In this document: one piece after another, positions 40,143 through 63,776 of the stretch
Position numbering within the stretch: the first letter of the stretch is position 1
Layout: each line of letters begins with the position of its first letter
NCBI GenBank assembly: GCA_904063045.1
Contig: CAJFCJ010000007.1
Coordinates: forward strand, 1,208,510-1,272,509
DNA: 64,000 nt
Source of the DNA: Dimorphilus gyrociliatus
Lineage: Eukaryota > Animalia > Annelida
Direction: 5' to 3'
Notes under the pieces: generated by a model
Databases searched by the model: none
Seen by the model: the letters and a program-made list of their open reading frames with translations, nothing else
Told to the model about the DNA's origin: nothing
Translations under genes and position numbers: made by a program

Positions 40143-43100
40143 ATGGATGAGAGACATTGGTGGATTGCTAGTAAAATTCAGGAAAGTTTCCACATTGGTG
40201 GATTCGATAATCCTACTATGTTAGAAGATTTTCTGTGCCAACCAAAAACTTTGGAGACTATCAATGATTTCCTAAGGGCTGGTGGAGAGACAACTCTAAT
40301 ATTCTACTGCGAAAAGCCAGTGTCAGGAACAAGAACAACCAGAGAACTTAACCTTGCCACCAGCCTAGAAGATATCATTCAAGTTCCAATGAATGAAACA
40401 AATATTATTTATTTTCTAAGAAGTAGAACAGATAATGATGTAGATATGAGCTATATGCAAAAAGATATATTTTGTGGAGAGATTAAGGGAAGCATACTAG
40501 AAACTTTAAATTACTCGATGGGAGAATTATTTCTTCCATTATTAAAAGAGAAAAAGGATTGGAGCGATTGTTCTAACGACAACAAATCAGTTCTTTTTCA
40601 CAACTTAGATAGAGTTATGGGCATAATTCGAGACAGTTCGGTACATTCTCAAACTACAAAGCAAATGGTAAATAGTTAAACACTTTAAACACACAAGTCA
40701 ATTGATTATAGTTATTGTTGTTATATATCTTTGTATATCATATAGGTTTTAAAACGACCTGAAAATATAGAAACGACGGACTTTAAACAGCAGAGAACCA
40801 TTGCTCAAGATAGTAATGCTGTTGCTAGTTACGAGGCCTTATTAGCCGAATGGATAGCCACAAGTGAAGCTGTATTGTCTGACGCTAGAGTTGATAAGTA
40901 AATACTTTGGTTTTACTCTTAATTAATCAAATTATTTTGAAATACTTTTTCATTGATAACCTAGGCATTTTGACCCAACTTCCGGTCCTCTAGCTGAATT
41001 AGAAAGATGGCAAAGACGACAAAGACTTGTAGGAAGTATAACGGAACAGTTAAAAAGTAAAGAATGTAAATCAGTTCTTAGTGTTCTGATTGCTGCCAAA
41101 TCCAGAATGTTGAAGAAATGGAAGCAAATTGACGCCGCGTGAGTATTTATTAAATTAATATATATAGAATATATAGTATAATATTTCATCGCCAACTATT
41201 ATAGGGTTACGGACGCCGTTAATGAAACTAAAGATAAAGTAAGATTTCTCGAATCTCTAAGAAAACATCTAGAAGGATTCTATGCGGACAGTACACCTTA
41301 TTCACTAATGACAAATGTTCTACCCGCTCTCTTGACAACCTTAAAGCAAATGGAATCCGTTTCTAGGCATTATGCTAGAACCGGATATCTAGGCCTACTC
41401 TTGAGCAAAGTAATTTCCGATTAAGAAGATTTAATTGACTTTTTTCCTTACCAAATGAAATTTGAAATTCTTTTCTAGATAACGAATCAAATTGTTACAA
41501 TATGCAAGAATTACATCAGTGATTGGACCATGACAGATGATGTAGATTGTTTCTGGAAAGTTATAGAGAAAGAGATATTCGGAACGAATCAAGCAATTCC
41601 GGAGGATGTTAGACAGCTTATAAGTGAATACGGTGAAAATTTAGAACCATCGGAAAAAAAAGTATATTAAAAGTTAATATTTAATCATTTAATCTATAGA
41701 TTTGTTATTCCTCTTTATTTAGATAACTAAAAAGGAAAAACAGTCGAGGACAAAGGAGACTAACGGGGAAAAAAAAGGATTTTTAGTTAGATTGGCTATC
41801 TGCTTTCAATTGCAAAGATATTATAGAGATTTTCTGCAAAAAATTCCGCAGGCTATAAATTATACTGCTGCGCCTATGTCAAATTATACATCAATGTCCA
41901 GTTTAGCTATGAACTCGGCCACAGGGTACAAGCAGTTTTCATATATCTTTTCGTTTGTCAGCTGCTATTTATTTGTTAATAATTTATTTCCGCTTTTAGA
42001 AAATCAAGGCCTAGTGCTTCTGATGCAAAAACTGGCCAGAGGAGTAGTGTAACAACATCACCTAATAAGCGAAATGTATTACTTGCTGATCCTAACGGCA
42101 TAAATATACAGGATGAGCAAAATATTCTTGCTCATCTTGACTTTTTCTGTATGAGATTGCGTAAAGTTTATGATTTAACGGGAACATTGTCCCAATTCCA
42201 TAGGTATACAAAACAATTAATCTTTGTTTCATTTCAATATACAATAATTTGTAGGCTGAGAATTTCATCTATGGGTTTACCTAAACCGTCTATGGACGAG
42301 GTAGTTATTGATGAGAAAGGAAACGAAAAAGAATACGATAGATACAGACAAGGAGGAGCGGATATTGTGACAATTGATGATATTACTATACCATCAAATC
42401 CGGCAAATTCTTTAAAAGCGATAGTAGAAGACGACGATGAAAAAGAAGAGGGCGAGAATTCTCAAGGAAACGAGGCTGACGAATATTATGATGCCCTTCG
42501 TCGTCAATCACCCACTCGGCTAACTCTAAATGAAGCCGATTTACTACGTTAGTTCTTAAATGAGGAGAAATATGTTATCCTTACATTTATCTTCGTTTGT
42601 AGATGAGTTCTATCCGCCAACTAAAGATTTAAAGTTATGCGACAGTTTCAACGATGTCATAAATAACCAATTTAGCAAGATAGCCAAGCAATTAGCTGAT
42701 TGTCTAAGCACACGAATTATTTTCGATTTACAGAGCAAAGTAAATGTTTCTCCTAATCACTATTGATTATAATATAAACTAATTTTGTCTCTTCTACTCT
42801 TATTTTGTAAAAGGATAAAGATAGATTTGAATCGGCCTACTCCGAATTTAATTTTAATATAGAAAAGTTAGAGCTTCTCCTTTCGGCTTATCTTAAAGCA
42901 ATATTTATGAGGAAGATGGAAACTAGGGAAGCATTACAACTATTGTCAAAGTAAGATATATTTTTTCTAGAAGAGAGAGAGAGAGAGGGGGAGAGAGAAT
43001 AACGATTATATATTTAATTTTTATGCTTTTTGTAGATTTGAGTCTGTTCAAGATCGAATAAGTACCAGACTAGTTATATCGGATAAATATTCCCAGGTTT

Positions 43101-46100
43101 TATCATGGTACGAAGATGATGTGGATAGAATTGGAGAAATATATGAAGCAGAAAAATCAAAACCACCCATTGTTAGAAATGTTCCTCCCATTGCTGGAGC
43201 TGTCAGCTGGGTTAGACAGCTGCTTAATAGAATTGAACAGCCTATGAATATTTTAAGTTCAAAAAGTGCTGTTAGTCAATTAAGAGAATTTAGGAGGATA
43301 ATCAGGTCCTACAACAGATTAGCAGAAACTCTAGTAACTTTTGAAAGTTTATGGCTGCAGCGTCTAAAGCGTGACGTTGAAGTCGCTAGACGTCTTATAT
43401 CTTCTCCATTATATAAAGTTGAAGATGGAGAAGTTGCTGTTAACCTTGATCAAACTCTCTTTCAAACAATGCAGGAAGTTAGATGCCTGAAAAGACTCAA
43501 GATACCTTTAACTGATCAGAGTAAAAACCTTTTAGAGTATGAAGAACGATTTAAGTATTATAGAGATCAGCTTGAATTATGCATATCAGACTTTAATGCA
43601 GTTAAGAGTCTTATCCCGGATCATTTATTAGGACTATTTACGCCTCATATTGATGAATGTAAAGCATCATTCCAACCAGGTTTCGCAACAGTTACCTGGA
43701 CTAGTATGAATATCGATGCTTTTCTACATCAAACTCATAGGGCTATAGAAAAATTAAAGGCCCTGTGTAAAAAAGTTCAGGATATAATGGATCTAAAAGT
43801 GGGCGGAGCCATGCAAACAATTCAACAAATGGTTCTATTCGATTATAAATTAGCGTTTGACAGGTAAAATATTTAAATTAAACACTTTTTATCTATTTAT
43901 TCTTTACTAATTTTTCCTTGTTTTCAAGGTGTTGGCCACCAAATGAATTTACAGCTGCTATTGTAAGTTCTATACAATCTAAGGGACAAAGGTAAACAAT
44001 TTTAATAAAAAGAACATTCACTGTTTATTAAATCTATAATAATAAAAAAAACATATTTATGCAGATTACACGATTTAGTTACGACAATGGAAACTGGAAT
44101 AAAAGAATGCGCAAATCTATTAACAAAGAGTAAAGTATGTATAACTTTTTTTATATCTGTTTTTTTTTACTTTGAAAGATAAATTGATAAAGGAAGATAC
44201 TTTAAACATGAACTAAAATTAATATAGCTTTCTTTTGGAATCAATAACATTCCTCTATATATTATTATTAAAAAAATATTAGCCTTGACATTGAAATGGC
44301 TTAATCAGCAATTAATTCGTTTTTTTTTACCCTTATGCTGTTTCTTGCATTGTTCCCTATCACTAATAAATCACCTAATATATAATAAACAATCCCATTC
44401 CCTATTTACTTTTCGTACCCCACTTCTCCGAAACTACTACTTTTAAAAAACAAATATCTCATTCATTTTAAATAGTTTTGAACCATATTCTATTAATATT
44501 CACTATTTATACATGGACAATCAGGGTCACACATTCTATACTCTCTTTGCAACATTGAAAGCACTTAAAAAATGGCGTCAACGAATCGTTATTAAACGAA
44601 AACCGGTAATTAGGATGATGGTGTACCGTCTATCTTATTAAAAAATTATTTGAAGAAGATATTTTATTATTTAATTTTATTTTTTTAAAAAAAAAAAAAA
44701 GAAACAAAAAAATATCATTTCTCTATTTTGTTTTCTTTTTGTTTGTCAAAAACTTTTATCCTATTTTTACTTTTTTTGTTATTGTTTTTTTCTTTTTTTG
44801 TTTCAGTTTTTGGCTTTTTTGTGGTTTTTTAATTTATAATCTTAAAAAAAGAAAAAAACAAACAAAACAAACAAAAATATCAATTACACAAGTGTGATAA
44901 AACAAACTACTTAACACAACTTTAGTTGTTTTTTTTTTTTTTTTGTTGAGAATTTTTATTAATACGTTTTATTGTTCTATCTATTCTTAATATTGATAAT
45001 TTGAAAAATGTTAATTGTTTATTAATATCAAAACACAGCCTAATACTGCAAGAAGTACATCTTCTCATCAATCTAGCGGTGATATACCATTTTCTGTACA
45101 AAAACAAACTAAAGCTGATCAAGCGGCAGAAGAATTATTAAGTAAAAATAATCAAATATATAGTAATTATTGTAAAAGTTCATAGTAATTTTAATAATGA
45201 ATTATTTACAGATTCGTATGTTGAAGAATTATATATAGTCGTTGAAAAAGCGATATTGAGATCGTTACTTATACTGGCCGAATCATCTGGTTGTGATCCA
45301 GATGTACTTAGATCTGAAACACCCGATTCGTTTGACTCACCGTTATCTAGTCGAATATTACGGGCTCAAAGCGCAAGAAGCTGTAGTAGACCTACATCGG
45401 TTTTATCAGTTCTCTCGAATATGACTTGGACTACAGAAGAAGCCGCAAACGTAACTTATTTGCGGTTTAATGTGTCCCTTAACTTCAATATTCCCACAAT
45501 ATCTATTGAGCCTAGATTGGAATATATTCAATCGAGTCTGATAACCGTTGCTCGGGCTATAGTTAATGTAGCTTCGGGTATAGTCTGGTTAGGAGGAGAC
45601 ATGTTGGGAGAGAGGTTGCTCAGACGTCTACAAAATGACAGTTGTGTCTCAAAGATATTGGCTCATTTAGGAGGTGTTATGGGCCATTTAGAACCCACTG
45701 TCCAACAGCATATTCAGCATTTGCAAATGCATGAATTTTTATGGAAAGACGACATGGTCGGCAATTACAATGAGTTTGTGTCATTCGATCCAGGAGATGA
45801 AGCAATGAAAAGAGAGGTCGAAAGACTATTACGTATTGAGAATCAGGTATTATCTATCCCAGAGAGATTGCCAGTTGGTTGTGTCCTACTCTCCACTAAT
45901 CCAGTCAGGGATGCTCTCCACGGATTTGCAATGACTTGGAAACAAAAATATGCATCTGCCCTTCATGAACAAGCGAAGGTAATTTAATTTCTACACTTGT
46001 CTGCCCTTTAAGCAAAAAATTTTATTATTCTATTAGACAAAACTGGATGAAGCCTTGCTCTATAGAAACAATGTTAGGAGAAGATTAGATGTAGAGGTCA

Positions 46101-49100
46101 TTAATCTAGATCAGTTGAATACCACCCTCTGTCTACTAGAAGAGCTGAGAGATATGGAAAATAAAATAGACGCTATTTATCGACCAATAGAAAAGATGTA
46201 TACTCAACTACAGTAAGTCAAAATTTAAGCTTTCAATTTAGAAAGGTATTAATGCATTTAAACTGTTCACCTTAAGGGAGTTCAACTTAAGATTACCAAG
46301 GAGAGAAATTGACGATCTAACATCCCTTCGCTCTGAATGGAGCGACTTGCTAAATTTAGCTGAAGAAGTTAGAAATCGTTTACTAAAAGAGAGACGAAAC
46401 AACTTTGAACAAGAACTTGACAAACAAGTCAAAGTAAGTTTTAAAAAGAGAACAACAAACATTTACAAATAAGTTTTCAATTAATTAATAAATATTTTTT
46501 ACCTTTTGTAGAATTTTGTTGTTGAAGTAATGCAATTTCGAAATGCTTTTGATGCACAAGGACCGGCTGTTCCTGGAATATCTCCAATGGTGGCAGTTAA
46601 TCGACTAAAGGATTTCCAAAATCGATATGCCCTCTACGAGACGAAAAGAAAAACTTTAGATTCTGTATCGAAATTATTTGGCATACCTTGCAAACCGTTC
46701 GAAGAGTTAGACAGAACGGGTGAAGAATTAAATCTTCTTGGTATGCTGTATGGGCTCTTTCAAAAGTTTATAAAGTTTGACGAAGAATTTCGGGATACAC
46801 TATGGGCTGATGTTGATTTAAAAGGGGCCTACTCGACTGTTGAAGAGTATTGGGACGAATGCCTCGCCCTTCCAAGTAAATTAAAGGATTGGGACGCCTA
46901 TCACGAAATGAAAACTGCTATTAACAATTATTTAAATATTCTCCCGCTTCTTCAACGGTTAGCCACAAGAGAAATCCGTAATAGACATTGGCTTCAGGTC
47001 ATGCAAGTGACTGGTTCCGCTTTTCAATTGGAAGCAAATGTTTTCAAATTATGCCATCTTTTAGATATTAATTTAATTAATCATTCGGATGCCATTGAGG
47101 AAATTTGTTACAATGCCGCCCACGAACAGCAGTTGGAAATTAGATTAAAACAAACTGAGGACGAATGGACTGATCAAGTTTTAATTTTCACTCATTATAA
47201 GAAACGCGGGAATATATATTTAGATAAGAAACATACAGAAAGATTGTTAGAACAACTTGATGATAGCAAAGCTATGCTTGCTAATATGCTTACCTCTCGC
47301 CATGTTGGTCCTATGAGAGATGAAGCCGCAAATTGGGCTGAGAAATTAAAGCAGGTATCTCTTGTTTTAGAAGAATGGCTTGCTACTCAGGATCTTTGGC
47401 AATACTTGGAAGCCGTTTTCAGTCAAGAAAAAGCTGCTAAAGAATTACCGCAAGAAGTTAAAAGATTCACAAGAATAGATAAGGGATGGACAAAAATGAT
47501 GAAGAGAGCCGCCGAAACTCGTAGCGTTTTGCAATGCTGCTACGGTGACGATGTTCCCAAAGCAGCAGTTCTCCGTAACATTCACGAAGAATTAGAAATA
47601 TGCTTCAAATCTCTAACGAATTACTTAAATGCCAAGCGTCAAATTTTCCCAAGATTCTTTTTCGTTAGTGACTCAGTATTGCTTGCTATATTATCCAAAC
47701 CCAATGACCTTGAGTCGGCTCGACCACATCTGAAGTCGATATTCTCTGGTATTAACAACATACTTGTAGAACAAGTGAAGGAAACGGAAAAAGATAGAAG
47801 ATCCTCCATGACGGAGCGCTCGAATAGTAGACTTTCAACTTCTCCATATTTAATGACCCATTCAGAAACTCCCCCAAAAATTGATAAACGATTGCACACC
47901 TTACATACAGCTAGTCATACTTCAACAGCAAACGTTCCTACTGCTCTACCATCCGAATTAATGGCAGATGAGATTGTCAATTACGAAGCAGTCGCCGTGA
48001 CAAGTATAGATGGGGAACATCTTAGATTAAGAGACAGAGTGCAACTTGCAGAAGGTGTTGAAGTATGGTTAAACGGAGTCGAAAAATCTTGCTCTAGTCT
48101 CATCAGGCAGTTACTAATAGATATCTGCGAAGATGCCCTAAGTGAAGGTTCATGTGCTGATTGGGCTTATAAGTATCCCGTACAAGTCTGTAAAGCAGGT
48201 TTACATTACTTATGGACTTTAAATTGTGAGAAAAGTATCACTGATATGAAAATTGACAGAAAATCATTGGCAAATGGTACTAAAAAGTTTGCTTCATTAG
48301 TTTCGAAAATACCATCAACTTTAATTAGAGGTTTTTGGAGGAATTACGGTAATGAGCCAATTCGAGTAGTACATAGAAGAAGATTGGAAGCTCTTTGTTC
48401 TCAAGCACTCTTTTTGAAAGATATGTTTGATGAAATAGCTCGAAGAAAGATTCGTGACATTACCGATTTTGATTGGCGTAGGACCGTACGATTTTACCTC
48501 TCTTATACAGATGTAGAACAGCGTTCTCCATCCGTTCATATTCTAGATGACCGACTAATCTACGGTTGTGAATTTTATGGCTGTGAGTCGTTTGTTGGTC
48601 TATCTCCTGCGACAGATAAAGCATTTTTCAACATGTCGCAGGCCCTTAGTCGCTATAAAGGGTCTCTATTATGCGGTGGACCATCATACGGTAAAACGGA
48701 TACTGTCAGGGGTTTTGCACAAATTACCGCAAACTTTCTTGCAATGTTTCAACTGAGCAATAAAACAAGTACAGCAGCTTTTTGTAGAGTTTTAAGAGGC
48801 TTAGCAGTTTGTGGCTGTTGGGGTTTAATTGAAGATATACAGTCCGCTTCACCAGGAATTGTCAACGTACTTCTTGATCATGTCTCAAGTATTCAAAGGG
48901 CATTAAAAACTGCTGCAAATTGCTGTAATTTAGGAGATGGACAAGAAGTATCTTTAAAGCCAGGCACTGCTTTCTTTCTAACCTATTCTACAGTCGAAAC
49001 TCCTTTCGATTCACGAGTACCAAATCAATTAAGACCCTACTTTAGGACAATTAGTATGCTAAAACCAGATCCTATAGTTGTGCTAAAGGCAAAGGCATCA

Positions 49101-52100
49101 GCTTATGGATTAAAGTCACCGTCTATATTAGCCCAGAGATTATCCTATTTCAACGATATATGTTCCGAACAGTTGTAAGCCTTTTACTAATTATATTACA
49201 CCTTAGCGTGTGTTATAATTTCGATTCTTTTTCAGTCCCGATGAACCTCAGAGTCGTTTGAGCTTGTCTGCGCTTATATCAGTTCTACAGTGCGCTGGTC
49301 AACGCTTACAAACTCTTAGATTGGAAAAGGAACGCTCAACGGATGATATGAAGAGTGCAAGATTGGATATGGGTTCAAGATCAAATTCTCAATTATCAAA
49401 TCCAAATCAGCAAGGTTCGTTTAGAGTTCCGATCCCTCCTGGTAATACTCCTCGTTCCGTATCCGCTACTAATCTAACGAGTATTTCGAACGTGTTTGAG
49501 GAAACTTACGACACGATAAAAGTAGTTGAGGATCAATATAAACCTAAACTCTCCAAACCAATTAGACAGGCGTTAACCTTTATTAATTTGCCGAAGCACC
49601 TAAAAATTCTAGGATACTCGAATCAGTTTTTTGAATTTCAACCTAGGGAACCACCGAAGAGAAAAATACCGCCCCCTTTTGAGTGCGAATGGTCAAAAAC
49701 AGAAAATAGATACTATTTAAAGCCAATTTACAAACCTATTTATCTTTCTCAGAGTTTGTTATAGAAAATATTAAGACCTAATAATCTCTAATCTTATCAT
49801 TTCTTTAGTGTAGTTAATGTGGTTAATAATTTTTTTCTCTCATCAGAATCATCTCTAAAAACAACACAACCAAGTCAGTTAACCATAAATCAGGGAAGAC
49901 CAGGGGCAGCCCTTTCAGAAAAGAGGAGAAGTACTCCTAATTCTCTTACGCAGGCTGCCAAAGCAGATCATGCTCTTGTCGGTCAATGTATGAACGAATT
50001 AATAGTTGGAAAATATTCACCGGAGCACGCAGGGGTTGTTTCGTTTTTGATAAAAGATATATTTAGCGGTCTACCGGAACCACCTAAAAATATTCCAATG
50101 AATTCAGCAGGTGAGCCTATTGTGAAAGCAGTTGAAAGTGTTTTAAGAGAGGAAGGAAAAGTTGCTTCTGGTATCTTCTTGGATAAGTGCATTAAATTTT
50201 ATCAAATTTCCTGTGTTCAACAAGGCATAATTGTTTGTGGATCGGCGGGTAATGGTAAATCCACAGTCATATCCTCTGTTATAAACGCACTTTCCCAAAC
50301 TAAACCTGATGGAGATTCAGTTGATACCAGTCATAAATTCATTCAGCTATATCCATTAGTTACAGACCAGTTACAACTGATACTGGGCTCGTTAAATAAG
50401 GATGGAGAATGGGTTGATGGAGTCTTAACGAACACTTGGAAGAAAATAAACCGTAATCAATCAACTACATGGTTATGCTTGGATGGGCCAATAAGATCAA
50501 ATTGGGCAGGAATTTTTAATACTGTTCTAGATAGTACACAAAGGATGACTCTACCAACTGGAGATGAACTTTTTATGTCATCAAACGTTCGAGTAATATT
50601 TGAAACGGATGATCTGTCCAATGCTGCTCCCGCTATTGTTTCCAAGTGTGGTATAGTTTACGTAGACCATGCAGCAGTTGGTTGGAAACCTTTAGCTAAA
50701 GCCTGGCTTGAAAACAGGTCTCCTCAAGAATCGACTGTTTTATCGAAGGCTTTCAACAAGACTGTCGATCCTGTCTGTAATTTCATTTGTAATGACTGTA
50801 AACCTCCCATTAGATTAACCGATTCGGGTATGTTTGCAACAACCTTACATCTACTCTCTGCAATGCTGGCAGATAATATAGAAATTGGCGGTGACTTACA
50901 TATTGAAAGATTATTCATATTCTGCCTTATGTGGTCATTTGGAACGTTCCTCGATCAAAAAGAACGTAAGCAGTTCTCCGAACTATTAACGACCTTAACA
51001 ACGTCACTTCCGGATGATGATAGAGATATCTGCGTTTTCGACTATTACGTAGATGACAGCGGTGAATGGGATCCTTGGACTGCCAGAGTACCGGAAGTAG
51101 CTCCATTAGACCATGTAAATTTACTACAAGAACCTTTTATAGACACTATTGGAACTATACAAACTCGAATGCTTCTTGATTTTGCTGCTCAAAATGGTCA
51201 GAATGTTCTCCTAATTGGACCTCCAGGCTGTGGCAAGAGTACAATGATGGACGATTATCAATCAGCACTTGAATCAGCTAAAAGTATTAATAAAAGAATC
51301 GTCTTTTCTGGCTCATCAACAGCTTATCAATTCCAACAATTTATCGAATCAAATATTACACATAGGCAAGGATTTGTATATGGTGCAAAAGATAATAAGT
51401 TATTTAAACTGTTTATCGACGACATCAATCTACCGCGCCCGGATGAATATGGCGTTGTTCGTCTCTCAGAGTTAACAAGACAAATTGTCGACTCAAAACT
51501 CATGATTACTCAAACTTCCCCGTTTGAATGGAGGACCGTGGAAGGTTTAAGTGTGCTGGCAACGATGAAAATATCTAAACAGCCATCGTTCAAAAATAAA
51601 CCCCTTGACTCTCGTCTAATGCGTCACTTTTGTGTACTTAACTTTCCAGACATGGGTGATGAAGCGTTAAAAACTATCTTCAGAGGAGTATTAGAATGCG
51701 TTATGCTTCAAAATGATAAGCCTGGTCTTGATATCGAAGTTTACGACAGGATTGTTCAAGGTTAGTTAATTTTTAAGTATTCTTTTATATTGCTCTAAAA
51801 CTGTAAACTTTTCAGCTTCTTTAACAATTTACAATGAAGTAAGCAGTGTACTAAGACCATCTTCACAGCCTGGAAGAAACCATTATCTCTTTACGCTAAA
51901 GACCATGACAGCAATATTCTCCAGTCTGAAGAAAATGGCTGATGAAAGTAGGGAGGACGAATTATTCATTGTTAGCCTATGGAGGCACGAAACAGAAAGG
52001 ATTATAAAAGATAGTTTAGCTCGATTTTCTGATATAAATTGGTTTGATGAAGTTTTGAGCAGAGTTTTTAGCGAAGTTTGGACGGAATTAAAAGAAGAAG

Positions 52101-55100
52101 ATTTACATTCCCATTTTGTTACTTTCCCAATTGAAAGTAGATCTTTTCAACAAATTCCAGCCAGAAAGGAACAATCTACCGCAATGGTAATTATAATATT
52201 TAAATAAGAGAGTTAATATAATTCTTTCTATTATTATCCGTTAATAGGGATGTAGTTTACTACCCATTCAAAATTTGACTGACGTTCACGCGTGCCTTCA
52301 AACTCACTTAAATCGTTATAACGAAGAGCTGGGCAATGTTCAATTGGACATGATGCTATCGGAAAACATAATTGCCCATGTTGTGAGGTTGCATAGAGTA
52401 CTATCGCATCAGAAAGATGCCAATATCGTATTTGTTGGACCTATTGGAACACATCTAAGTACCCTATGTCGACTCGCACTTCATATGAATGAGTTAGAAA
52501 TACATCAGATGGATACATCTAAATCTACAACCTTTATGGATGGCTTAAGAAGTGCTATAAGAATGACAGGCGCAGAGGGTAAAGTGCTAACAATATTTTT
52601 AGATGGAAGACAATTAACAAATGATCAGTATTTAGATGCTATAAATTCAGTATTAATATCTGGGGAATATCCTCACTTATTCTCTAATGATGAAATGGAT
52701 GGTTTGCTGCAGGCTTTGCAACCCGTTATGAAAAGAGAATTACCTCATTCCAGCGCCAGCTTACACGATTATTTTGTATCAAGAGTTAAATCAAATTTAC
52801 ATATTATTTTATGTTTACCACCGTCGCATAGTTTATTGGCAAGTGCGATTTATGATTTCCCTGGACTATTCTCTCATTGTCAAGTAATATGGCTTAACGA
52901 TTGGCCTAAGGCTGTTCTATTGGGTGATGCCAACTATTATATCCATAAGAATAAAGTATGCGAAAATTGCTCATCAGAGTTAACAAGTAGAGTTGTAACA
53001 ACTTTAGCAAATATGCATTCGTTTGTCCTTGAAGAGTGTGGCCAAATGAAATGGGCGGGCAATACAAATCCTCAAATACAAGTCAAAGAGATAAAGTTTC
53101 AAGAAAAGAAGAAAGAACAAATAAAAGTTACAGATAAGAAAGTTTCTAATAAACCATACTCGAAATATCTTTTAATAGACGCCATCAAGAGAAAGCAGAA
53201 ATTAGCTTTCGAAAGTCAACCTCATCACGTCTTTGTTGGCCCAACAACTTTCCGTAGATTTTTGGATACATTTCATCAGTTATTGAAGCTTAAATCTACA
53301 GAGAGAACCGAAAAAGTTGCTAAATTGGAAAAGGCTTTGTCTACTTTAGATCAAACGAGAAAGGATGTAAAAAAGACTAAGGCTGATATTAAACAAGTAT
53401 CTCAACAATATGAAGCGGCTAAAGTCGAAACAACTGATTTATTAAATAATTTAATTAGGAAAGCAACCCTATTAGAAAAGATAAAAGCTAAAGTTCTCAA
53501 ACCAAGCGCATTGTTGGCTTTCTTACAAATGTCTGATGATGAAACTGTTCACGATAGCGAAGTTGAAGAGGACGAATTACTAGAACAAGCATCCAAAGAC
53601 GAAAGAGATACTTATGATGAAGAATTTGAAAAGCTTCGAGAAGCAAATCTACGATCTAGGGAGGTAAAGGCCCACGAAGAATTACAAGTAGCTGAAAAGA
53701 ATTTGGCAATTTGTCAAGAACAATTGGAAAATGCCAGAAAGCAAGTAAACGTTTGGCGTAGTAAAGTAGATAGAAGTACAATTGACAGATTGAAAGCTTT
53801 TCAAAATCCAACCATTCTTGTTGGACAAGTTATCGAGATGGTTATGATATTAATTGGCAAAAGACCACCAACAATGAGATTAGGAGATAGACCAGATTAT
53901 CCAAAGGATGAATCTTCCACTAGGTTTTCAGCAAGTTCTAGTTCAACAAAAATGACAAATCCACCTCAAAGATTAAAACGTAAGTCGTTCCAGAATATTC
54001 TATTCTTTTAAAACTTTATTTTGTACTCTAATCAAAAGAAAAAGATTGAAACGTGATCATCTATTTCTTTCTTTTCATTTTCTTTTCTTTAAAACTATTA
54101 CAAACGACAGCTTTCTCTCGTCCTTTATCCGCTTTGAGCGATACAACTGATTCGGATAGCAGTGGTAAGACACAGAACGAAATTTATACCCCACTTACGC
54201 AATATATTCATGTGCATATATTAGAAAGATATTAGAATTAACTAATATCTAGCTAATATGACTTTTATTCATGGCTAGGCCTTCCCAAATCCCTCAAAAC
54301 CTTTATTTAGCTTCTTTTTTTTGTATCTAGGAAGATTACTAGAATCGTTTATGTAGAAACAATCAACTATACACTTTACTAATTGCATGTCAAGCTATTT
54401 TCTCCTTAGTTGTTTTTATGATGTTCCCCATTAGAAGTTTTTAAAGGAGAATATTGATTTAAGGAGAACAATAAATTAACCTGTTTAGGTCACGCGTCAC
54501 TATCGGCATTTTAAGATTATAAAAGCATGCGTAGAAAAGAACAAAGTTCTCACTGCAAAAGTTAATTTCCTTCTGTTATTTTTTTGCACGTTCCTAATGA
54601 TAGTTTTTCTGCTCTTTTTTTTTTGTTCTTATACTCTCTCAATTTATATAAACTTTTATCCTGTTTTATCTTTGAAATTAGTTAAGAAACCTGATTTGGA
54701 ACAATCTTCAAGTGGAACGGGAGGCAGATACGATAGGACTACTTGGAAACAATTGCAACAAGCTATGAATGATTCCCCGAAATTTGTTGATATGCTCCAC
54801 AACGTCAGATGGGAGGAAGGCATACCGGATGATGTAGCTGCTGCTGTTGAAAGCTATTTTGCTAAATCGGCTGATGGGAAATTAGGTGGTGAAGGTTCCA
54901 CTATGTTGGAAAATGCAAAAGATAAGACGTTTGTCGCTCAGAGAAGTACCTCTCCAGAACCAAAGGGGATTACAGTCGCCGCTGCTAAATATTCGTCGGA
55001 AGATGCTGCCACCCTAGTTGAATACACTCTGGCAATTATCGAATTTAATAGAAGGTAAAAGGAAATTGTTATCTTATTAAAAAATATATTAAAAGGCTTT

Positions 55101-58100
55101 TTCTTGTCAGATGTGGACCATTAAAAGCCGCTATAGATAAGCGTAATGAATTAGTATTGGAAATTGAGGAGATGGCAAGAGCTGCCAAGGAAAAGTCAGA
55201 TTCTGCAAATGGGAAAGAAAAGGACGAATCTGAGGAAAGAGATACAGAGAAGACATCAGAGGAGGTGTACAATGAAGAAGCTTTGGCCAGAGTTCAAAGT
55301 GAAGTTGATGAAATGCAGGAGAAGTTTGATTCAACGATCGAGAAAAAGCATGGTCTAGAAATAGAGTTGAGTTCAATGAAAGATCGTTTAAAAGCTGCTA
55401 CTGATCTGCTTGAATCTATAAGAGATGTTGAACGAACTTGGAAACAATACGTAAAAGAATATTCCTCTAATGATATTCTCCTTTGCAATTGTATAGTAGC
55501 CGCAGCTTGCTTAGTATATTGTTCCCCTCTTGACATTGATGGTAGATCGAGAATGGGAACATTCTTTATGACAATATGTCGTCACAATGATTTACCAACC
55601 TCAAGTAGAGTTCTACTTGAAAATGTCAGCTTACACAACTTCCTTTTGGAACCTTACGTTGATATTAAATGGAAAAGATCAGGATTACCCTATTCGCCAT
55701 CAGCTCTTGACAGTAGTTGCCTTATAATTCACGATCATTTAACTAATTCGTGGCCAATGCTGTGCGATGTATCTGCAAGATCACCATCTTGGCTAGAAAC
55801 TTTTATCAAATCTAATGGTCAAAAGTTGACAACTGTTCGGTATTGCGATATTAAATCACAGTTGGAAACAAGTTTAACGGATGGCTCGGCACTTTTAATC
55901 AAAGATGTAGATGCTGATGAGATTATATCGGATAAAAGGTTTTCAAAGTTAATATTAGCTAGAAAGCGTTTTACAGAATCAACTAGTCCATTTAAATTAC
56001 AAGTTGGACGACATGAAGTTGAATGCCGTCCTTCTTTTCGCCTCTTCTTACACACGACAACTGAACCTTCAAAGTTACCCTCTGAACTGTCAGCTTATGT
56101 TACTGTTGTTAATGTCAGCGACACTAGAATGAACATTGAGGAAGAATTATTAGATAGATTCACCCGTTTGGAGAAAACTAGATTGTGGACCGAACGGAAT
56201 CAATTACTAGATGAACGTCTTGAACAGCTAGAGAAAAAGAAGATACTCGAAGAAGATATTAGCTGTCATCTGGCGTCTGGTACTCGTCTACTTAGCGAAC
56301 TAAATCATATTAGGAAAATTGCTGAATTAAAGAAACATTTAGATGAAACAAATGAAACAATGTCGAAGATTGATCAAAACGATGAAGGCGTTAACAAAGG
56401 TAGAGAAGTTTACAGGGTTATTGCTCGTCGAGCAGCTGTTTGCTATGATGTAGGCCAACACATGGCAGTTTTGAAAGCGTTTTATCGCATGTCTTGGAAT
56501 CAGTTTGTAGAGATATACGATAGTGCTATACTTCATTCAGATAGATCGGCTGTTAACGTAATTGTTGAACGATTAATGTGGAGTTGCTATAGTTATACGG
56601 GCAGGATGTTGCTTGAAAAGGATAGACACATCTTTAGCGTTATCTTAGCCTTAGAAGTTGAAGAGAGTTGTGGTCGTCTTGGATTAGGGGAGAGAGAGTT
56701 CCTAATATCTCCACACCTTGGGTCAATTACCATGGCAAAAATAGCTAGTCAAGAAGAAACTCGAGAACATACAAAAGTTGGTCAGATGAAAAAACCTTTT
56801 GATTGGATGAACGACGACGCGTACAATAATCTACAAATACTCGCAGTCCACTTTCCTTGGTTCAGGGATATGTTTGAGCGAATGCCTAGAGATGGGCGAG
56901 AAACTCAATGGAGAAGCTTGTGCGAAAATGAGATGGCGGAAAATGTTCCGTTGCCCGATAAAATGGATGATGAATTTACTCCATTACAGAAAATGTTGAT
57001 AGTGAGGGCCGTACGATCGGATAGATTATTACAACTCACTACCCTTTACGTAAACACAGTATTGGGAAAACGTTATACAGCTGAACCTCCAGCGGATATA
57101 GGAACGCTTCTTAGGACATCAAAACCAGCCTCTCCGATAGCTTTTGTTCATATAAATGAAGATGCCGAAAGTGCAGAAAAAGTAATCAGAGAATCAGCCT
57201 TGAAAAGGAATATAAAACTAACAACATTGACAATTTGCGGTCTAGAAAAAGGTCAAGATAAATCGATAAAGAAACAAATAGAAAAAGCTGTCAATGAACA
57301 ATGTTGGATATTATTATTTTCAGCACAAAATGGACCAAAACTATTAGATAATCTAGCAACTTTCCTTCAATCAAAAAATCCGCCCGAAAGTTTCCGTTGT
57401 TTCGTAATTGCACGCTACACGGAACAATTACCCACTTCTTTCTTACACTCATCCACAAGGGTAACTTTAGATACTCCAACAAATTCGAAAGTAACAATGC
57501 AAAGAGCCCTGTCCAGCATCGAAAGCTGCATCAATCGAAATCAAACAAGACAAGAATTGAACATTGTCCTTCACAATATTATTTATTTATACGCTGCTGT
57601 TAGACTGAGAGCTCAATTCGGGGTTGCGGGCTTTGTTGAGGCTTCCTCAGCCCTGTCTGTCGATATCGGGGATTTGAACGAACTATTATTATATGCAATC
57701 AATGAGTTTAATGATGGTTTACAGTGTCCCTTGCCGGATGGTTCTCTCTTAAATCGGTCACCATCTTGGTCTGGTGTAAGATTTGGTCTCAGTGATGGCC
57801 TATTTGGTCGTGCCATTGGGCATCCCTTGGATTTGTCAGCGATATCGTCAATGGTTGATTATTGGATCAGTCCTAACGCAACGAAAAAAGACTTTGAGCC
57901 TCCTAGGATAAAGTATAGACCTCCTGCTATGTTCTTTAATCCGACTGCGAAAATGCAACAATTAATTCAATCTCTAGACGCAATAAATGTTCAGCACTTG
58001 GAAACTCCGGAGGCATGTAATATTTACTCATCATCGGAACTCGTTCTGGCTAACGACCAATATGTATTCACTCGTATTAATCTAATCTATGATCATATGC

Positions 58101-59143
58101 CGTCCAGTCGCACTCTGTCTCACCTTGCCTTTCCCCGTCCACCAACTCCTTTGGAGGGAGCGCCAATAGCAGCAATCAGTCAAAGTGCCGCACAGCCAGC
58201 AGTTGCAGCTAGAACAGGAGTTTTCGCATCAGCATCGGCGGCTCTCGTAAAAATGCGAAAGGAGATTGAATTATGGGAGATTTGTCATACATCTCTAAAC
58301 AAATTACCGAAGGGTTATACTAGGGACTATGTGATTGAAAGAGCAAAGAAAATTGGAGGTTTTACACCATTTAATTTATTTATTATAAACGAAGTTGAGT
58401 TAATGTTCAAGCTATTAGCCGAGATGAAAGTATCGTTAAGTGCTATAAAACAGGCATGCGAATTATCTAGCTTTGGAGATAATCTAAAGGAAAATCAACT
58501 TCAGATTGCATATGATTTATATAATCAATGCATACCAGCTATTTGGAGAAAGTTAGCCTATGAAACCGCTCCACCACCCCACCATTCATTACTTTCTTGG
58601 ATAAATGATTTAAATAACCGATGTCAGCATTTGGATAAATTATTGGTTCTTGGACGAGATAAAATGCCTGCATATTGGTTAGGTGCTTTCTTTCAGCCAA
58701 GTTCGCTCTTTGCCGTCCTCAAACATGATTTCTACAAGAAAACTAGTAATGAAAGAGCTGGCAATATAGATAAAGTAATTTTGCAGACCGAGGTGACCGC
58801 TAGAGATAAAGAACATATTAGGGAACCTCCAGTAGAAGGAATATTTGTCTACGGAATTTATATGTGGGGTTGTCACTACGATAAAACAGCTGCTGAAATG
58901 GTGGATCAACCATCCAGAAACTTGTGTTCCTCCCTACCAGTTTTACATGTTACCTGTTGGAATAAAAGTGACAAGCCTGTACTACAAGATTCTAACAAAG
59001 CTAATGAGCTTTATTCGTGTCCGGTGTATTCTTCTCGTTTGGCAAGGAATAATCCGATCCTTCACGTTGATGTCAGGAAGGAAGGTATACCGTCCGCCAG
59101 ATGGCCTCTCCGAGGACTTCACGCTACAATTAGACCATATTAA
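40143..59143 (+). CDS. Divergent axonemal outer-arm gamma-type (DNAH5/DNAH8-like) dynein heavy chain, ~5344 aa, 25 exons, with degenerate AAA1 and AAA4 sites
   Basis: Exons 40143-40667, 40746-40897, 40965-41138, 41205-41409, 41479-41661, 41723-41925, 42000-42203, 42255-42547, 42603-42739, 42814-42950, 43036-43863, 43929-43991, 44065-44134, 45039-45141, 45212-45978, 46037-46212, 46277-46433, 46512-49174, 49236-49753, 49847-51760, 51816-52186, 52248-53979, 54111-54164, 54682-55054, 55111-59143 are frame-consistent (16035 nt). Gamma-type motifs PPIVRNVPPIAGAVSWVRQL, GPAVPGISP..RL..FQ, IRNRHW, LQCCYGD, FPRFFFVSDSVLLAILS, WVDGVLT, WLCLDGP, SGEYPHLFSNDEMD, LYSCPVY, WPLRG. Confidence 0.95.
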
Positions 59144-60050
59144 AAATAACTGCTTTCCTTTTTATAATAATAATTTAACATCGAAAAAGACGTTTACCAG
59201 AAATATATAAAACTTCATAATTTTATTATTAAACTTATTAATAAATTGTCGTTATTTCTTTTATTCTTTTTAAAGTTCTAAAATAAGAAAGATGGTTTGA
59301 TATGAAAGATCTATTACCCATAGATTAAAGACTTAGAGAACAAAATAGTAGTATTCCTTTTTAAAACAGACATAGTTGTTTTGATTACATTACTGTTAAA
59401 TTGTTTATAATATAACAGTCGTTATGGAACAATTATATATTCTACATTAATATCTAATATCAATATTTTCAATTGATTTTAATATACATTAACATTTTTA
59501 TAATGTATTATATATAAAACGCTATATATAGCATCCATATAGTATCTCATTCTTTCACGGCTACTTTTATCATTCTCTACAAGACTTGCCAGATACATTT
59601 CTTTCCTGTTTTCAGTTTCGAATAAATGTGAAATCTATCTTAAATTTTTAATAATTCGAAAATCTACTAAACGAATTGGTATGTTATTATTATTAATTAT
59701 TCGTATAATATTAAAATTTTTTGCGTAAACTTCTTGACATATACGTAATTTCTTATTATGTTCCAAGTTTCGTTTTATGCCTATTTTTCGTATGCTTGTT
59801 ATTCGTAACTCATTTTTGTTGATCTTCAACGGAGAAAGAGTAAACTTTTTTTATTGTTGAAAAATGTGTTTATGTGTCATACCAAATGTTCGTAGATAAC
59901 ATGATTCCTGTCTAGTCAACAATAGTGTCAGAGAATTTTGCAAATGCTACAATTATGTAGGCATAGAGTATGTTTATAGAAGGAGTCTTTTATTTATTTA
60001 TTTATTTAATTGTCAACATTTTTCTCCGTTTTAGGAAAAGATTTGAAAAT

Positions 60051-63000: not shown

Positions 63001-63776
63001 GAAGCATCCACGATTTCCAAAAAGAGTTTTTGATTATGTCAGAGCTACATCACGAGAATATTGTGAAAGCTATTGGATTTATGTCCGATGATGATGAAGG
63101 TTTGTAACGTCTTTTCTTTTCAATTTGGTTTCAAATATTCACTCTTTCAAATGTCTTAAAAGGTATGTCCAATCTAAAAATTGTTGTGGAGTTTCAAAAA
63201 CTAGGATCTTTAGAAAAGTATCTTAAGTCAAGAAAATCAGAAATTGCTTTGGATATGAAGTACAAATGGTTGAAAGAAGTTGCACAGGGTATGGCATATC
63301 TATCAAGTGAAGGAATTGTTCATCGAGATTTAGCTGCTCGTAATGTGCTTTTGAACGAGAATTTCACTGCAAAGATAACAGACTTTGGCCTTGCTAGATG
63401 CACAGAAGATGGATGCTATCAAATGGTAAATAACGAGATTCCAATGTTCTATTACTCTCCTGAGGTGCTATTAAATCGCAAGTATAGTACTGAAGGAGAT
63501 GTTTGGTCATACGGTGTATTTAGTTGGGAAATTATGATCGATTGTCAGAAAGCGCCTAAAACACATATAGTGGAAATGGACAGCAGATTTAGAAGTCACA
63601 TCACACGCGAAAATGTTGGAGAATACCTTTTAAACAATCCAGGTACATTTTACTTAACTGAGATTTATAAATTTGAAGATAGATTTAAGAATTTACTGGA
63701 CAAGTGCTTCAAAGTGGAAGAGAAGCAACGTGCAAGCTTCGACGCAATTGTTAAACATTTACAAAACAACTTTTGA
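60051..63776 (+). CDS. JAK: Janus kinase (FERM - SH2-like - pseudokinase - Tyr kinase), divergent, ~1069 aa
   Basis: Exons 60051-60995, 61055-61396, 61462-61582, 61654-61773, 61835-62190, 62246-62761, 62834-62919, 62990-63099, 63163-63776 join in frame (the 60880-60995 part is less certain). FERM LYLRFRW and [11 protein letters not shown]; SH2 [11 protein letters not shown]; JH2 VHGNIRLRN and FKLADSG; JH1 [31 protein letters not shown]. Confidence 0.9.

What the first reader, a model, noticed from the sequence alone, without database searches (positions are those of the whole stretch)
48600..50650. Intact ~5,340-aa dynein heavy chain with an apparently dead AAA1 engine: candidate pseudo-dynein
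Seen: a complete, frame-consistent gamma-type heavy chain with no premature stops. AAA1 Walker A is GGPSYGKT (48675-48698; canonical GPAGTGKT). Walker B is WGLIEDIQS (ED at 48831-48836; canonical WGCFDEFNR). Sensor I is TYST (48981; canonical TMNP, Asn lost). Sensor II is LSLSALISVL (Ser at 49267 where canonical FGLRxxxSVL has Arg). The AAA2-donated Arg finger is AIVSKCG (Lys at 50644; canonical ATVSRxG). AAA4 Walker A is also broken (GPIGTHLS, 52437-52460), while AAA2 (GSAGNGKS) and AAA3 (GPPGCGKS, FIDD) P-loops are retained. Established: AAA1 hydrolysis drives the dynein powerstroke, and Walker A or B mutants there are immotile. Inference: this chain may bind nucleotide but work as a scaffold, brake, tether or load sensor in the axoneme rather than as a motor. 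Degenerate dynein-like proteins such as DNHD1 are a precedent, so novelty must be checked.
Basis: partly seen in the sequence, partly recalled or inferred. Interest (0 to 1): 0.85.

Follow-up and report, generated by a model that had tools for sequence, protein, structure and literature searches.

The report
Annelid copy of non-motile dynein DNAHX
This is an intact, expressed and strongly conserved giant dynein gene of the tiny worm Dimorphilus gyrociliatus whose main ATP engine has lost its catalytic residues. It belongs to DNAHX, a non-motile dynein family first described in sea urchin sperm in a 2025 preprint, so it is a new member of a known kind.

Summary
The window is Dimorphilus gyrociliatus. 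The gene (40143-59140, + strand, 24 exons) is the public model DgyrCDS5878, 5,326 aa.

- **AAA1 (the main ATP-hydrolysis domain):** it keeps the P-loop Gly-Lys-Thr. Walker B reads ED instead of DE, sensor I Asn is Ser, sensor II Arg is Ser, and the AAA2 arginine finger is Lys.
- **AAA4:** the P-loop GK is replaced by HL.
- **Not a pseudogene:** against a relative about 90% identical, pN is 0.069 and pS is 0.74 (saturated), so omega is below about 0.05 in every domain. A public run holds a 15.7-kb spliced contig that is 100% identical.
- **Not new as a kind:** the protein nests with support 1.0 inside the clade of Lytechinus XP_041462850, the type of DNAHX (Chai et al., bioRxiv 2025). DNAHX is a non-motile offshoot of outer-arm DNAH5/8.
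- **Family marks present:** length above 5,200 aa, the AAA4 small-domain insert, the stalk and microtubule-binding-domain inserts, and the GSHLxTL motif in AAA4.

Smaller new points: this member has lost more catalytic residues than most. Its males inject sperm, which argues against the preprint's link to external fertilisation. The mRNA contig skips a 113-aa coding-like segment that the public model keeps.

Another scan note (s1-082424) reports a dead-AAA1 dynein on another piece of this genome. I did not examine it.

The parts
40143..59140 (+). DNAHX-type dynein heavy chain gene (public model DgyrCDS5878, CAD5117057.1): 24 exons, 5,326 aa as annotated
   Evidence: Exact peptide mapping of P0151 onto the window. 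The exon tested is 99.9% identical to P0151. Pfam finds DHC_N1, DHC_N2, AAA_6, AAA_7, AAA_8, AAA_9, Dynein_heavy and Dynein_C.
48675..48698 (+). AAA1 Walker A GGPSYGKT. Gly, Lys and Thr are kept; the fifth residue is Tyr where canonical dyneins have Thr.
48831..48836 (+). AAA1 Walker B pair reads Glu-Asp instead of Asp-Glu. The following Asn-Arg is also lost (IEDIQS against FDEFNR).
   Evidence: The 90%-identical relative also has ED.
48981..48992 (+). AAA1 sensor I: TYST in place of TMNP, so the Asn is lost
49175..49235 (+). 61-nt GT..AG intron just before the sensor II helix
   Evidence: Sequence. Spliced RNA contig joint 49174/49236.
49267..49269 (+). AAA1 sensor II position: Ser where canonical dyneins have Arg (SRLSLSAL against YDFGLRxx)
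49415..49846 (+). 432 nt that the RNA contig removes (GT..AG). The public model keeps 49415-49752 of it as 113 coding residues, so this is probably an optional insert in the AAA1 small domain.
   Evidence: Joint and translation. The segment is open and coding-like in the relative (pN 0.157, pS 0.677, 70% aa identity).
50239..50262 (+). AAA2 Walker A GSAGNGKS, retained
50644..50646 (+). AAA2 arginine finger that points into the AAA1 site: Lys in place of Arg (AIVSKCG)
51217..51240 (+). AAA3 Walker A GPPGCGKS, retained. The FIDDIN Walker B matches canonical axonemal chains.
52437..52460 (+). AAA4 P-loop GPIGTHLS, with Gly-Lys replaced by His-Leu. It matches the DNAHX-wide motif G-x-x-G-[STAC]-H-L-x-T-L.
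53046..53219 (+). Insert of about 58 aa in the AAA4 small domain (the 'PS2i' of DNAHX). It is predicted as a beta-hairpin followed by a helix.
   Evidence: The insert is shared with Lytechinus, Haliotis and Rhinatrema DNAHX and absent from DNAH5/8/10. The AlphaFold2 model shows strands at fragment residues 273-282 and 288-297 and a helix at 303-314, with pLDDT 45-69 there.
53508..53774 (+). Acidic insertions in stalk coiled-coil 1
   Evidence: Shared by DNAHX members and absent from canonical chains. This part has no significant match to solved dynein stalks.
53871..54743 (+). Ser-rich disordered insert before helix 3 of the microtubule-binding domain. The 702-nt intron (53980-54681) interrupts it.
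   Evidence: Alignment. RNA joint 53979/54682.
54867..54965 (+). Insert at helix 5 of the microtubule-binding domain, containing the conserved GEGS motif
   Evidence: Alignment.

Best explanation
The gene is the Dimorphilus gyrociliatus orthologue of DNAHX. DNAHX is an animal-wide paralogue of the outer-arm heavy chain DNAH5/DNAH8 (the Chlamydomonas gamma type) that has given up motor activity.

Shown here:
- The gene is intact.
- It is made as a spliced mRNA.
- It evolves under strong purifying selection.
- It sits inside the DNAHX clade.
- It carries the family's insertions.
- It keeps the AAA1 P-loop Lys and Thr, but has lost or displaced the Walker B Glu, sensor I Asn, sensor II Arg and the arginine finger.

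Inferred from the sea-urchin cryo-EM work: AAA1 binds ATP but does not turn it over. The AAA4 small-domain insert holds the C-terminal cap so that the ring stays in the pre-powerstroke shape. The remodelled stalk and microtubule-binding domain grip microtubules poorly. Through its conserved tail and linker, the chain pairs with a second, active heavy chain.

The most likely job is a non-motile partner that keeps another axonemal dynein autoinhibited and/or helps deliver it while cilia or sperm flagella are built. This is a hypothesis of the DNAHX authors and has not been demonstrated.
For: - **Identity:** the window exon is 99.9% identical to CAD5117057.1 of D. gyrociliatus. The gene model was mapped.
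- **Family search:** the top 18 hits are 3,525-5,421-aa proteins (14 of them above 5,200 aa) from molluscs, echinoderms and a tunicate, scoring 473-569 bits. The hydrozoan Hydractinia protein (identified) follows at 334 bits, and canonical DNAH5/8 at 257 bits or less. One top hit is XP_041462850.1, the type DNAHX.
- **Tree:** in a maximum-likelihood tree of 42 heavy chains, the DNAHX core clade has support 1.0, Dimorphilus plus molluscs 1.0, and canonical DNAH5/8 form a separate clade at 1.0.
- **Shared insertions:** the AAA4 small-domain, coiled-coil 1, pre-helix-3, helix-5 and coiled-coil 2 inserts are all shared.
- **Catalytic residues:** the table is.
- **Selection:** pN 0.069 against pS 0.738 over 5,243 codons; for the AAA1 large domain, pN 0.094 against pS 0.739.
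- **Expression:** a 15,739-nt spliced contig with no mismatches over 4.7 kb.
- **Shift of constraint:** AAA1 is the best-conserved domain among canonical DNAH5/8 (77% identity) but among the least conserved in DNAHX (47%). Tail, linker and AAA2 are as conserved as in the canonical chains, or more so.
- **Mechanism in the orthologue:** bioRxiv 10.1101/2025.01.18.633724.
Against: - No biochemistry or localisation exists for the Dimorphilus protein.
- Sea-urchin and most mollusc DNAHX keep Walker B DE, sensor I Asn and the arginine finger. The worm's AAA1 pocket therefore differs, and its nucleotide state is untested.
- The hairpin-plus-helix insert is predicted at only low to moderate confidence.
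- The 'phi template and delivery' role is a model built from 8-10 Å maps in one species.
- The DNAHX work is a preprint.
- Dimorphilus injects sperm, so a role tied to free-spawned sperm does not fit.
- I could not confirm a canonical DNAH5/8 gene elsewhere in this genome.
Confidence: 0.88

Rival explanations
1. It is a decaying pseudogene copy of DNAH5/8, and the AAA1 changes are random decay.
For: Several catalytic residues are lost together. The protein has many low-complexity insertions.
Against: About 16 kb of open reading frame runs over 24 exons with no stop. Replacement changes are about ten times rarer than silent ones against the relative, in every 200-codon window. A full-length spliced transcript exists. 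Orthologues about 5,300 aa long with the same insertions occur from sponges to amphibians.
Confidence: 0.01
2. It is still a slow or unconventional motor. The Glu-Asp pair and the Lys finger would support some ATP turnover at AAA1, or AAA3 would drive movement.
For: The AAA1 P-loop Lys and Thr, an acidic pair in Walker B, and intact AAA2 and AAA3 P-loops are all kept. The linker is highly conserved, with dN 0.03.
Against: Sensor I Asn, sensor II Arg, the arginine finger and the Walker B catalytic Glu position are all changed together. In established dynein work, single Walker A or Walker B mutations in AAA1 abolish motility. The sea-urchin orthologue keeps DE yet still holds unhydrolysed ATP and shows no post-powerstroke class. 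The stalk and microtubule-binding domain carry the family's disruptive inserts.
Confidence: 0.07
3. It is the worm's orthologue of DNHD1, the 'orphan' degenerate heavy chain of mammals.
For: Both are long heavy chains with a degenerate AAA1 and disordered inserts. The DNAHX authors call DNHD1 a possible structural counterpart.
Against: The gene branches within the DNAH5/8-derived DNAHX clade. None of the 91 named or unnamed hits is annotated DNHD1. The paper states that the two lack specific sequence homology and carry their inserts at different sites. I had no DNHD1 sequence to test directly.
Confidence: 0.03

Closest known systems
DNAHX (type: Lytechinus variegatus XP_041462850, 5,272 aa; Chai et al., bioRxiv 10.1101/2025.01.18.633724 / PMC11785096)
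   Same: - It falls in the same clade with full support.
- It has the same unusual length.
- It shares the AAA4 small-domain insert, the stalk and microtubule-binding-domain inserts and the AAA4 GSHLxTL motif.
- The AAA1 P-loop Lys and Thr are kept, while the Asn-Arg after Walker B and the sensor II Arg are lost.
   Different: - The worm protein has lost more. Walker B is ED (DE in echinoderms and most molluscs), the sensor I Asn is gone, the arginine finger is Lys, and the P-loop fifth residue is Tyr instead of Val.
- It has a probably optional 113-aa insert in the AAA1 small domain.
- The host has hypodermic insemination, not free spawning.
- No structure or biochemistry exists for it.
Outer-arm dynein heavy chain DNAH5/DNAH8 (Chlamydomonas gamma chain; called the OAD alpha chain in the sea-urchin work)
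   Same: These are the best solved-structure matches. The domain order is the same (DHC_N1, DHC_N2, six AAA modules, C-terminal domain). The linker is very similar: 336.5 bits over residues 1-412 of the 882-aa exon that holds the linker and the AAA1 large domain.
   Different: Canonical chains are 4,500-4,700 aa, keep every AAA1 catalytic residue and the AAA4 GK, and lack the inserts. In them AAA1 is the most conserved domain; here it is among the least conserved.
DNHD1 (mammalian 'orphan' dynein heavy chain domain protein)
   Same: It is also a non-canonical heavy chain with a degenerate AAA1 and disordered inserts. It is needed for sperm flagella and nodal cilia, according to the literature cited.
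   Different: It is reported as a separate lineage, with inserts at other sites and no Walker B catalytic residues. I did not test this by sequence.

Membership tests
DNAHX | Forms one clade with XP_041462850, apart from canonical DNAH5/8 and all other heavy-chain classes | tested here: met
   FastTree (LG+gamma) on 42 sequences and 4,352 columns. The DNAHX core of 17 tips has support 1.0, Dimorphilus plus molluscs 1.0, and the canonical clade 1.0. P0165 is XP_041462850.1.
DNAHX | Unusual length, above about 5,200 aa against about 4,500 aa, caused by insertions spread along the chain | tested here: met
   The annotated model has 5,326 aa. The assembled transcript gives about 5,214 aa.
DNAHX | Folded insert in the AAA4 small domain (pre-sensor-II insert: beta-hairpin plus alpha-helix) | tested here: met
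   A homologous insert of about 58 aa aligns with that of Lytechinus, Haliotis and Rhinatrema and is absent from DNAH5/8/10. AlphaFold2 predicts two strands and a helix there, but at pLDDT 45-69.
DNAHX | Insertions in stalk coiled-coils 1 and 2, and before helix 3 and in helix 5 of the microtubule-binding domain | tested here: met
   All are present at the same alignment positions as in other DNAHX members. One search's precomputed Pfam lists give no PF12777 (stalk) match for the DNAHX hits. My Pfam scan of two large exons holding most of this gene's stalk (52275-54011 and 55157-59143) found none either; the exon between them (54684-55052) was not scanned.
DNAHX | AAA1 motifs depart from the canonical dynein consensus | tested here: met
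   the Walker A fifth residue, the Walker B pair, the Asn-Arg after Walker B, sensor I, sensor II and the arginine finger are all non-canonical.
DNAHX | ATP trapped in AAA1, a permanent pre-powerstroke state, no motility | not testable with these tools
   Known only for the sea-urchin protein by cryo-EM.
DNAHX | Forms a two-headed 'dynein-X' with another heavy chain, partly as a phi particle | not testable with these tools
   The tail dimerisation region DHC_N1 is present. No partner is known.
DNAHX | Occurs in externally fertilising animals (a correlation proposed by the authors) | tested here: not met
   Dinophilid males dissolve the female epidermis and inject sperm (abstract of bioRxiv 10.1101/491886). 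From general zoology, the caecilian, caenogastropod, heterobranch and cephalopod carriers seen also fertilise internally. This weakens the correlation, not the membership.
Canonical outer-arm DNAH5/DNAH8 | Complete AAA1 catalytic set (GPAGTGKT, DE, sensor I Asn, sensor II Arg, arginine finger) and the AAA4 GK | tested here: not met
DNHD1 | Groups with vertebrate DNHD1 in a tree | not tested
No hit carried that name.

The most novel reading that the evidence does not exclude
DNAHX is not a device of free-spawned sperm. In Dimorphilus, with its very compact genome and hypodermic insemination by dwarf males, a 16-kb DNAHX gene is kept under strong constraint after losing even the catalytic residues that sea-urchin DNAHX retains. 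It also appears to be made with or without a 113-aa insert in the AAA1 small domain. This would point to a general, nucleotide-binding but hydrolysis-independent role in building or regulating motile cilia, possibly somatic ones, with isoform control. It would also make Dimorphilus a tractable animal for knocking the gene out.
Probability: 0.3. Interest if true: 0.45.

Novelty: new member of a known kind. Interest (0 to 1): 0.3.

Why it matters
That validates the reading but removes most of the novelty. Three modest points remain.

1. An annelid member shows that the AAA1 pocket can lose the Walker B order, sensor I, sensor II and the arginine finger while the P-loop Lys and Thr and the rest of the 5,300-aa chain stay under strong selection. 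This supports a role based on nucleotide binding, not hydrolysis.
2. The gene is present in an animal that injects sperm, and in other internal fertilisers. This argues against the proposed tie to external fertilisation.
3. The public gene model differs from the assembled transcript by a 113-aa segment that looks coding.

Dimorphilus is small, easy to culture and has a compact genome, so it could serve for a loss-of-function test, which the DNAHX preprint does not report.

Tried and rejected
- **Pseudogene reading:** rejected on the selection and RNA evidence.
- **Shifted catalytic residues:** rejected. Pairwise alignments to solved dyneins and a 42-sequence alignment put the substitutions at the canonical columns.
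- **DNHD1 orthology:** not supported by the tree or by hit names, but not tested with a DNHD1 sequence.
- **Direct translation across intron 49180-49818:** I used the splice sites instead.
- **tblastn of the public protein on the window:** it missed many short tail exons. Exact 8-mer mapping replaced it.
- **Canonical DNAH5/8 in this genome:** no tool reaches the rest of the genome. The scan's notes give only an unverified 'outer-arm dynein' 1.42 Mb downstream, and the word 'DNAH8' occurs in no note. I ran no further search on it, because a Dimorphilus hit would be buried among thousands of equally similar DNAH5/8 sequences.
- **True dN/dS:** silent sites are saturated against the only close relative (dS above 1.5 or undefined). 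I therefore report only an upper bound on omega.
- **RNA evidence:** it rests on one run kept as contigs (kind not on record). It shows splicing and presence, but not level, tissue or sex.


Full report
**What is in the window.** The + strand from 40143 to 59140 carries one very large gene made of long exons and introns of 50-100 nt. Pfam finds the full dynein heavy-chain set on its exons: DHC_N1, DHC_N2, AAA_6, AAA_7 with its lid, AAA_8, AAA_9, Dynein_heavy and Dynein_C. The next gene downstream, from about 59970, encodes a FERM domain and a tyrosine-kinase domain. Upstream lie a RhoGAP gene, a diaphanous-type formin on the minus strand and a KRR1 gene.

An exhaustive profile search with the 882-aa exon that holds the linker and the AAA1 large domain returned a 90%-identity cluster. 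That cluster contains CAD5117057.1, 'DgyrCDS5878' of the annelid Dimorphilus gyrociliatus, 5,326 aa. The window exon is 99.9% identical to it. Exact peptide mapping places all 24 exons of that model at 40143-59140.

| Site | Canonical | Here | Window coordinates |
|---|---|---|---|
| AAA1 Walker A | GPAGTGKT | GGPSYGKT | 48675-48698 |
| AAA1 Walker B | DE | ED | 48831-48836 |
| AAA1 sensor I | TMNP | TYST | from 48981 |
| AAA1 sensor II | Arg | Ser | 49267 |
| AAA2 arginine finger | Arg | Lys | 50644 |
| AAA4 P-loop | GVGGSGKQ | GPIGTHLS | 52437-52460 |

- Alignments to solved dyneins show these are substitutions at the canonical columns. WGCFDEFNR becomes WGLIEDIQS, and FLTMNPGYAGR becomes FLTYSTVETPFDSR. 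ATVSRAG becomes AIVSKCG. GVGGSGKQS becomes GPIGTHLST.
- Sensor II spans an intron. The donor and acceptor seen give CSEQFPDEPQSRLSLSALISVL. A spliced RNA contig uses exactly that joint.
- GGPSYGKT still satisfies GxxxxGK[ST]. The pocket has lost its hydrolysis residues, not its phosphate-binding loop.
- The best solved relatives are a 4,730-aa heavy chain in entry 9fqr, human DNAH5 (8j07) and the Chlamydomonas gamma chain (7kzm_C). 'Gamma-type' is therefore correct.

**It is a living gene.**
- Contigs from a lineage about 90% identical at the protein level (Logan assemblies of SRR23372228 and others) carry the same gene, exon for exon and with no stops.
- Over 5,243 aligned codons, the proportion of replacement differences is 0.069 and that of silent differences is 0.738. 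Silent sites are saturated, so omega can only be bounded; it is below about 0.05 overall. No 200-codon window with a defined dS exceeds 0.09.
- The AAA1 large domain behaves the same way (pN 0.094, pS 0.739). The relative keeps ED, the sensor I Ser and the sensor II Ser.
- A public run holds a 15,739-nt contig that is identical to the window over the 4.7 kb laid. It is spliced at five GT..AG introns within 48760-54750. This is a full-length mRNA.

**What it is.**
- A word-indexed search with residues 2100-2900 gave a block of 18 top hits scoring 473-569 bits. They are 3,525-5,421 aa long, 14 of them above 5,200 aa. They come from molluscs (Haliotis, Lottia, Littorina, Pomacea, Lymnaea, Aplysia, Mytilus, Solemya and others), echinoderms (Asterias, Lytechinus, Strongylocentrotus, Antedon, Anneissia) and a tunicate (Styela). 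The hydrozoan Hydractinia protein (identified) follows at 334 bits, and canonical DNAH5/8 at 257 bits or less.
- The exhaustive search added a caecilian, two frogs, a bichir, the coelacanth, a cephalopod and a sponge.
[quoted passage not shown] Its type protein, XP_041462850 of Lytechinus variegatus (5,272 aa), is my hit P0165.
- In a maximum-likelihood tree of 42 heavy chains, the worm protein lies inside the DNAHX clade (support 1.0) as sister to the molluscs (1.0). The clade broadly follows animal phylogeny. Canonical DNAH5/8 form a separate clade (1.0).

**Family marks.** The paper defines DNAHX by its length, by insertions in the stalk and before helix 3 and in helix 5 of the microtubule-binding domain, by a folded insert in the AAA4 small domain that clamps the C-terminal cap, and by non-canonical AAA1 motifs.
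- All the insertions are present in the worm protein at the same alignment positions. They show recognisable sequence similarity to the sea-urchin, abalone and caecilian proteins, for example a conserved Trp-Ala-Gly start and a Pro-Tyr-Ser/Thr-Lys motif in the AAA4 insert, and GEGS in the helix-5 insert.
- An AlphaFold2 model of the AAA4 module predicts two strands and a helix inside the insert, as described for the sea-urchin protein. Confidence there is only pLDDT 45-69.
- The AAA4 P-loop replacement G-x-x-G-[STAC]-H-L-x-T-L is a shared derived motif of the clade.

**How this member differs.** Across DNAHX the P-loop Lys and Thr never vary, which argues for conserved nucleotide binding. The sensor II Arg and the Asn-Arg after Walker B are lost in every member of the 17-tip core clade and in the hydroid and sponge proteins. 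The cephalopod protein keeps the Asn. An unnamed 4,481-aa outlier on the stem of the clade keeps the sensor II Arg.
- Most echinoderm and mollusc members still have Walker B DE, the sensor I Asn and the arginine finger.
- Dimorphilus has ED, Ser and Lys, and a Tyr at the fifth P-loop position where most members have Val.
- Vertebrate members have independently reached DD and Lys or Gln.
- Domain-wise identities show the shift of constraint. Among canonical DNAH5/8, AAA1 is the most conserved part (77% and 71% for its large and small domains). Among DNAHX it is among the least conserved (47% and 37%). Tail, linker and AAA2 are as conserved as in the canonical chains, or more so. The species sets differ, so this is a rough comparison.

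**Most likely mechanism.**
- By homology with the sea-urchin protein, AAA1 binds ATP and holds it.
- The AAA4 insert prevents the swing of the C-terminal cap, so the ring stays in the pre-powerstroke state.
- The stalk folds back and the microtubule-binding domain is impaired.
- The conserved tail (DHC_N1) and linker allow pairing with another heavy chain. The authors saw two-headed 'dynein-X' particles, some in the autoinhibited phi form. They propose that DNAHX templates inhibition and delivery of other axonemal dyneins during flagellar growth.

For the worm, I regard 'non-motile, nucleotide-binding partner chain' as likely, at about 0.85. The specific delivery role is plausible but unproven, at about 0.35.

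**Points that go beyond the preprint.**
1. The paper links DNAHX to external fertilisation. Dinophilid males inject sperm through the female epidermis (abstract of bioRxiv 10.1101/491886). From general zoology, the caecilian, caenogastropods, heterobranchs and the cephalopod that carry the gene also fertilise internally.
2. The transcript contig removes 49415-49846, which is 432 nt and in frame. The public model keeps 113 residues there. That segment is open and coding-like in the relative (pN 0.157, pS 0.677). It is probably an optional insert between the sensor II helix and the next helix of the AAA1 small domain.
3. The 702-nt intron inside the microtubule-binding domain is spliced out directly, with no micro-exon in this transcript. 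A separate 370-nt low-depth contig lies inside it.

**Not settled.** I could not verify a canonical DNAH5/8 gene elsewhere in the genome. The only lead is an unchecked scan note of an 'outer-arm dynein' 1.42 Mb downstream. I had no DNHD1 sequence for a direct test. Another scan note (s1-082424) reports a dead-AAA1 dynein on another piece of this genome, which I did not examine.

**Verdict.** This is a new member of a known kind, and it is of modest interest.

Noticed in passing
window 49415-49846: The assembled mRNA splices out 432 nt in frame, whereas the public model DgyrCDS5878 keeps 113 residues there. The segment is open and coding-like in a 90%-identical relative (pN 0.157, pS 0.677). 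It is probably an alternative insert in the AAA1 small domain.
   Followed up: partly
window 54139-54508: A separate 370-nt, low-depth contig of the same run lies inside the 702-nt intron of the microtubule-binding domain. It could be unspliced RNA or a rare extra exon. The main transcript joins 53979 to 54682 directly, so the micro-exon suggested in note s1-084736 is not in it.
   Followed up: partly
window 30251-33607 (- strand): An ORF of 1,118 aa with no Pfam match sits in a stretch with strong GC and AT skew, upstream of the dynein gene.
   Followed up: no
window 59970-63776 (+ strand): The next gene downstream encodes a weak FERM F1 match and a tyrosine-kinase domain (FAK- or JAK-like). 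It runs towards the window end.
   Followed up: no
P0018 (Bufo gargarizans DNAH8, XP_044147017.1): This canonical-clade toad DNAH8 also departs from the AAA1 consensus (GPAAAGKT, DEFSR, and sensor I TMSP with Asn replaced by Ser). Some relaxation of AAA1 may therefore occur outside DNAHX.
   Followed up: no
P0003 Rhinatrema, P0163 Littorina, P0164 Pomacea, P0169 Lymnaea, P0011 Argonauta: From general zoology these are internally fertilising animals. The first four fall inside the core DNAHX clade and the cephalopod just outside it. This runs against the published correlation with external fertilisation.
   Followed up: partly
P0006 (4,481 aa, ENA, unnamed): This sequence branches on the stem of the DNAHX clade. 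It has a canonical-like P-loop, sensor II Arg and arginine finger, Walker B DN, and no long inserts. It may be an intermediate or an early offshoot of unknown organism.
   Followed up: no
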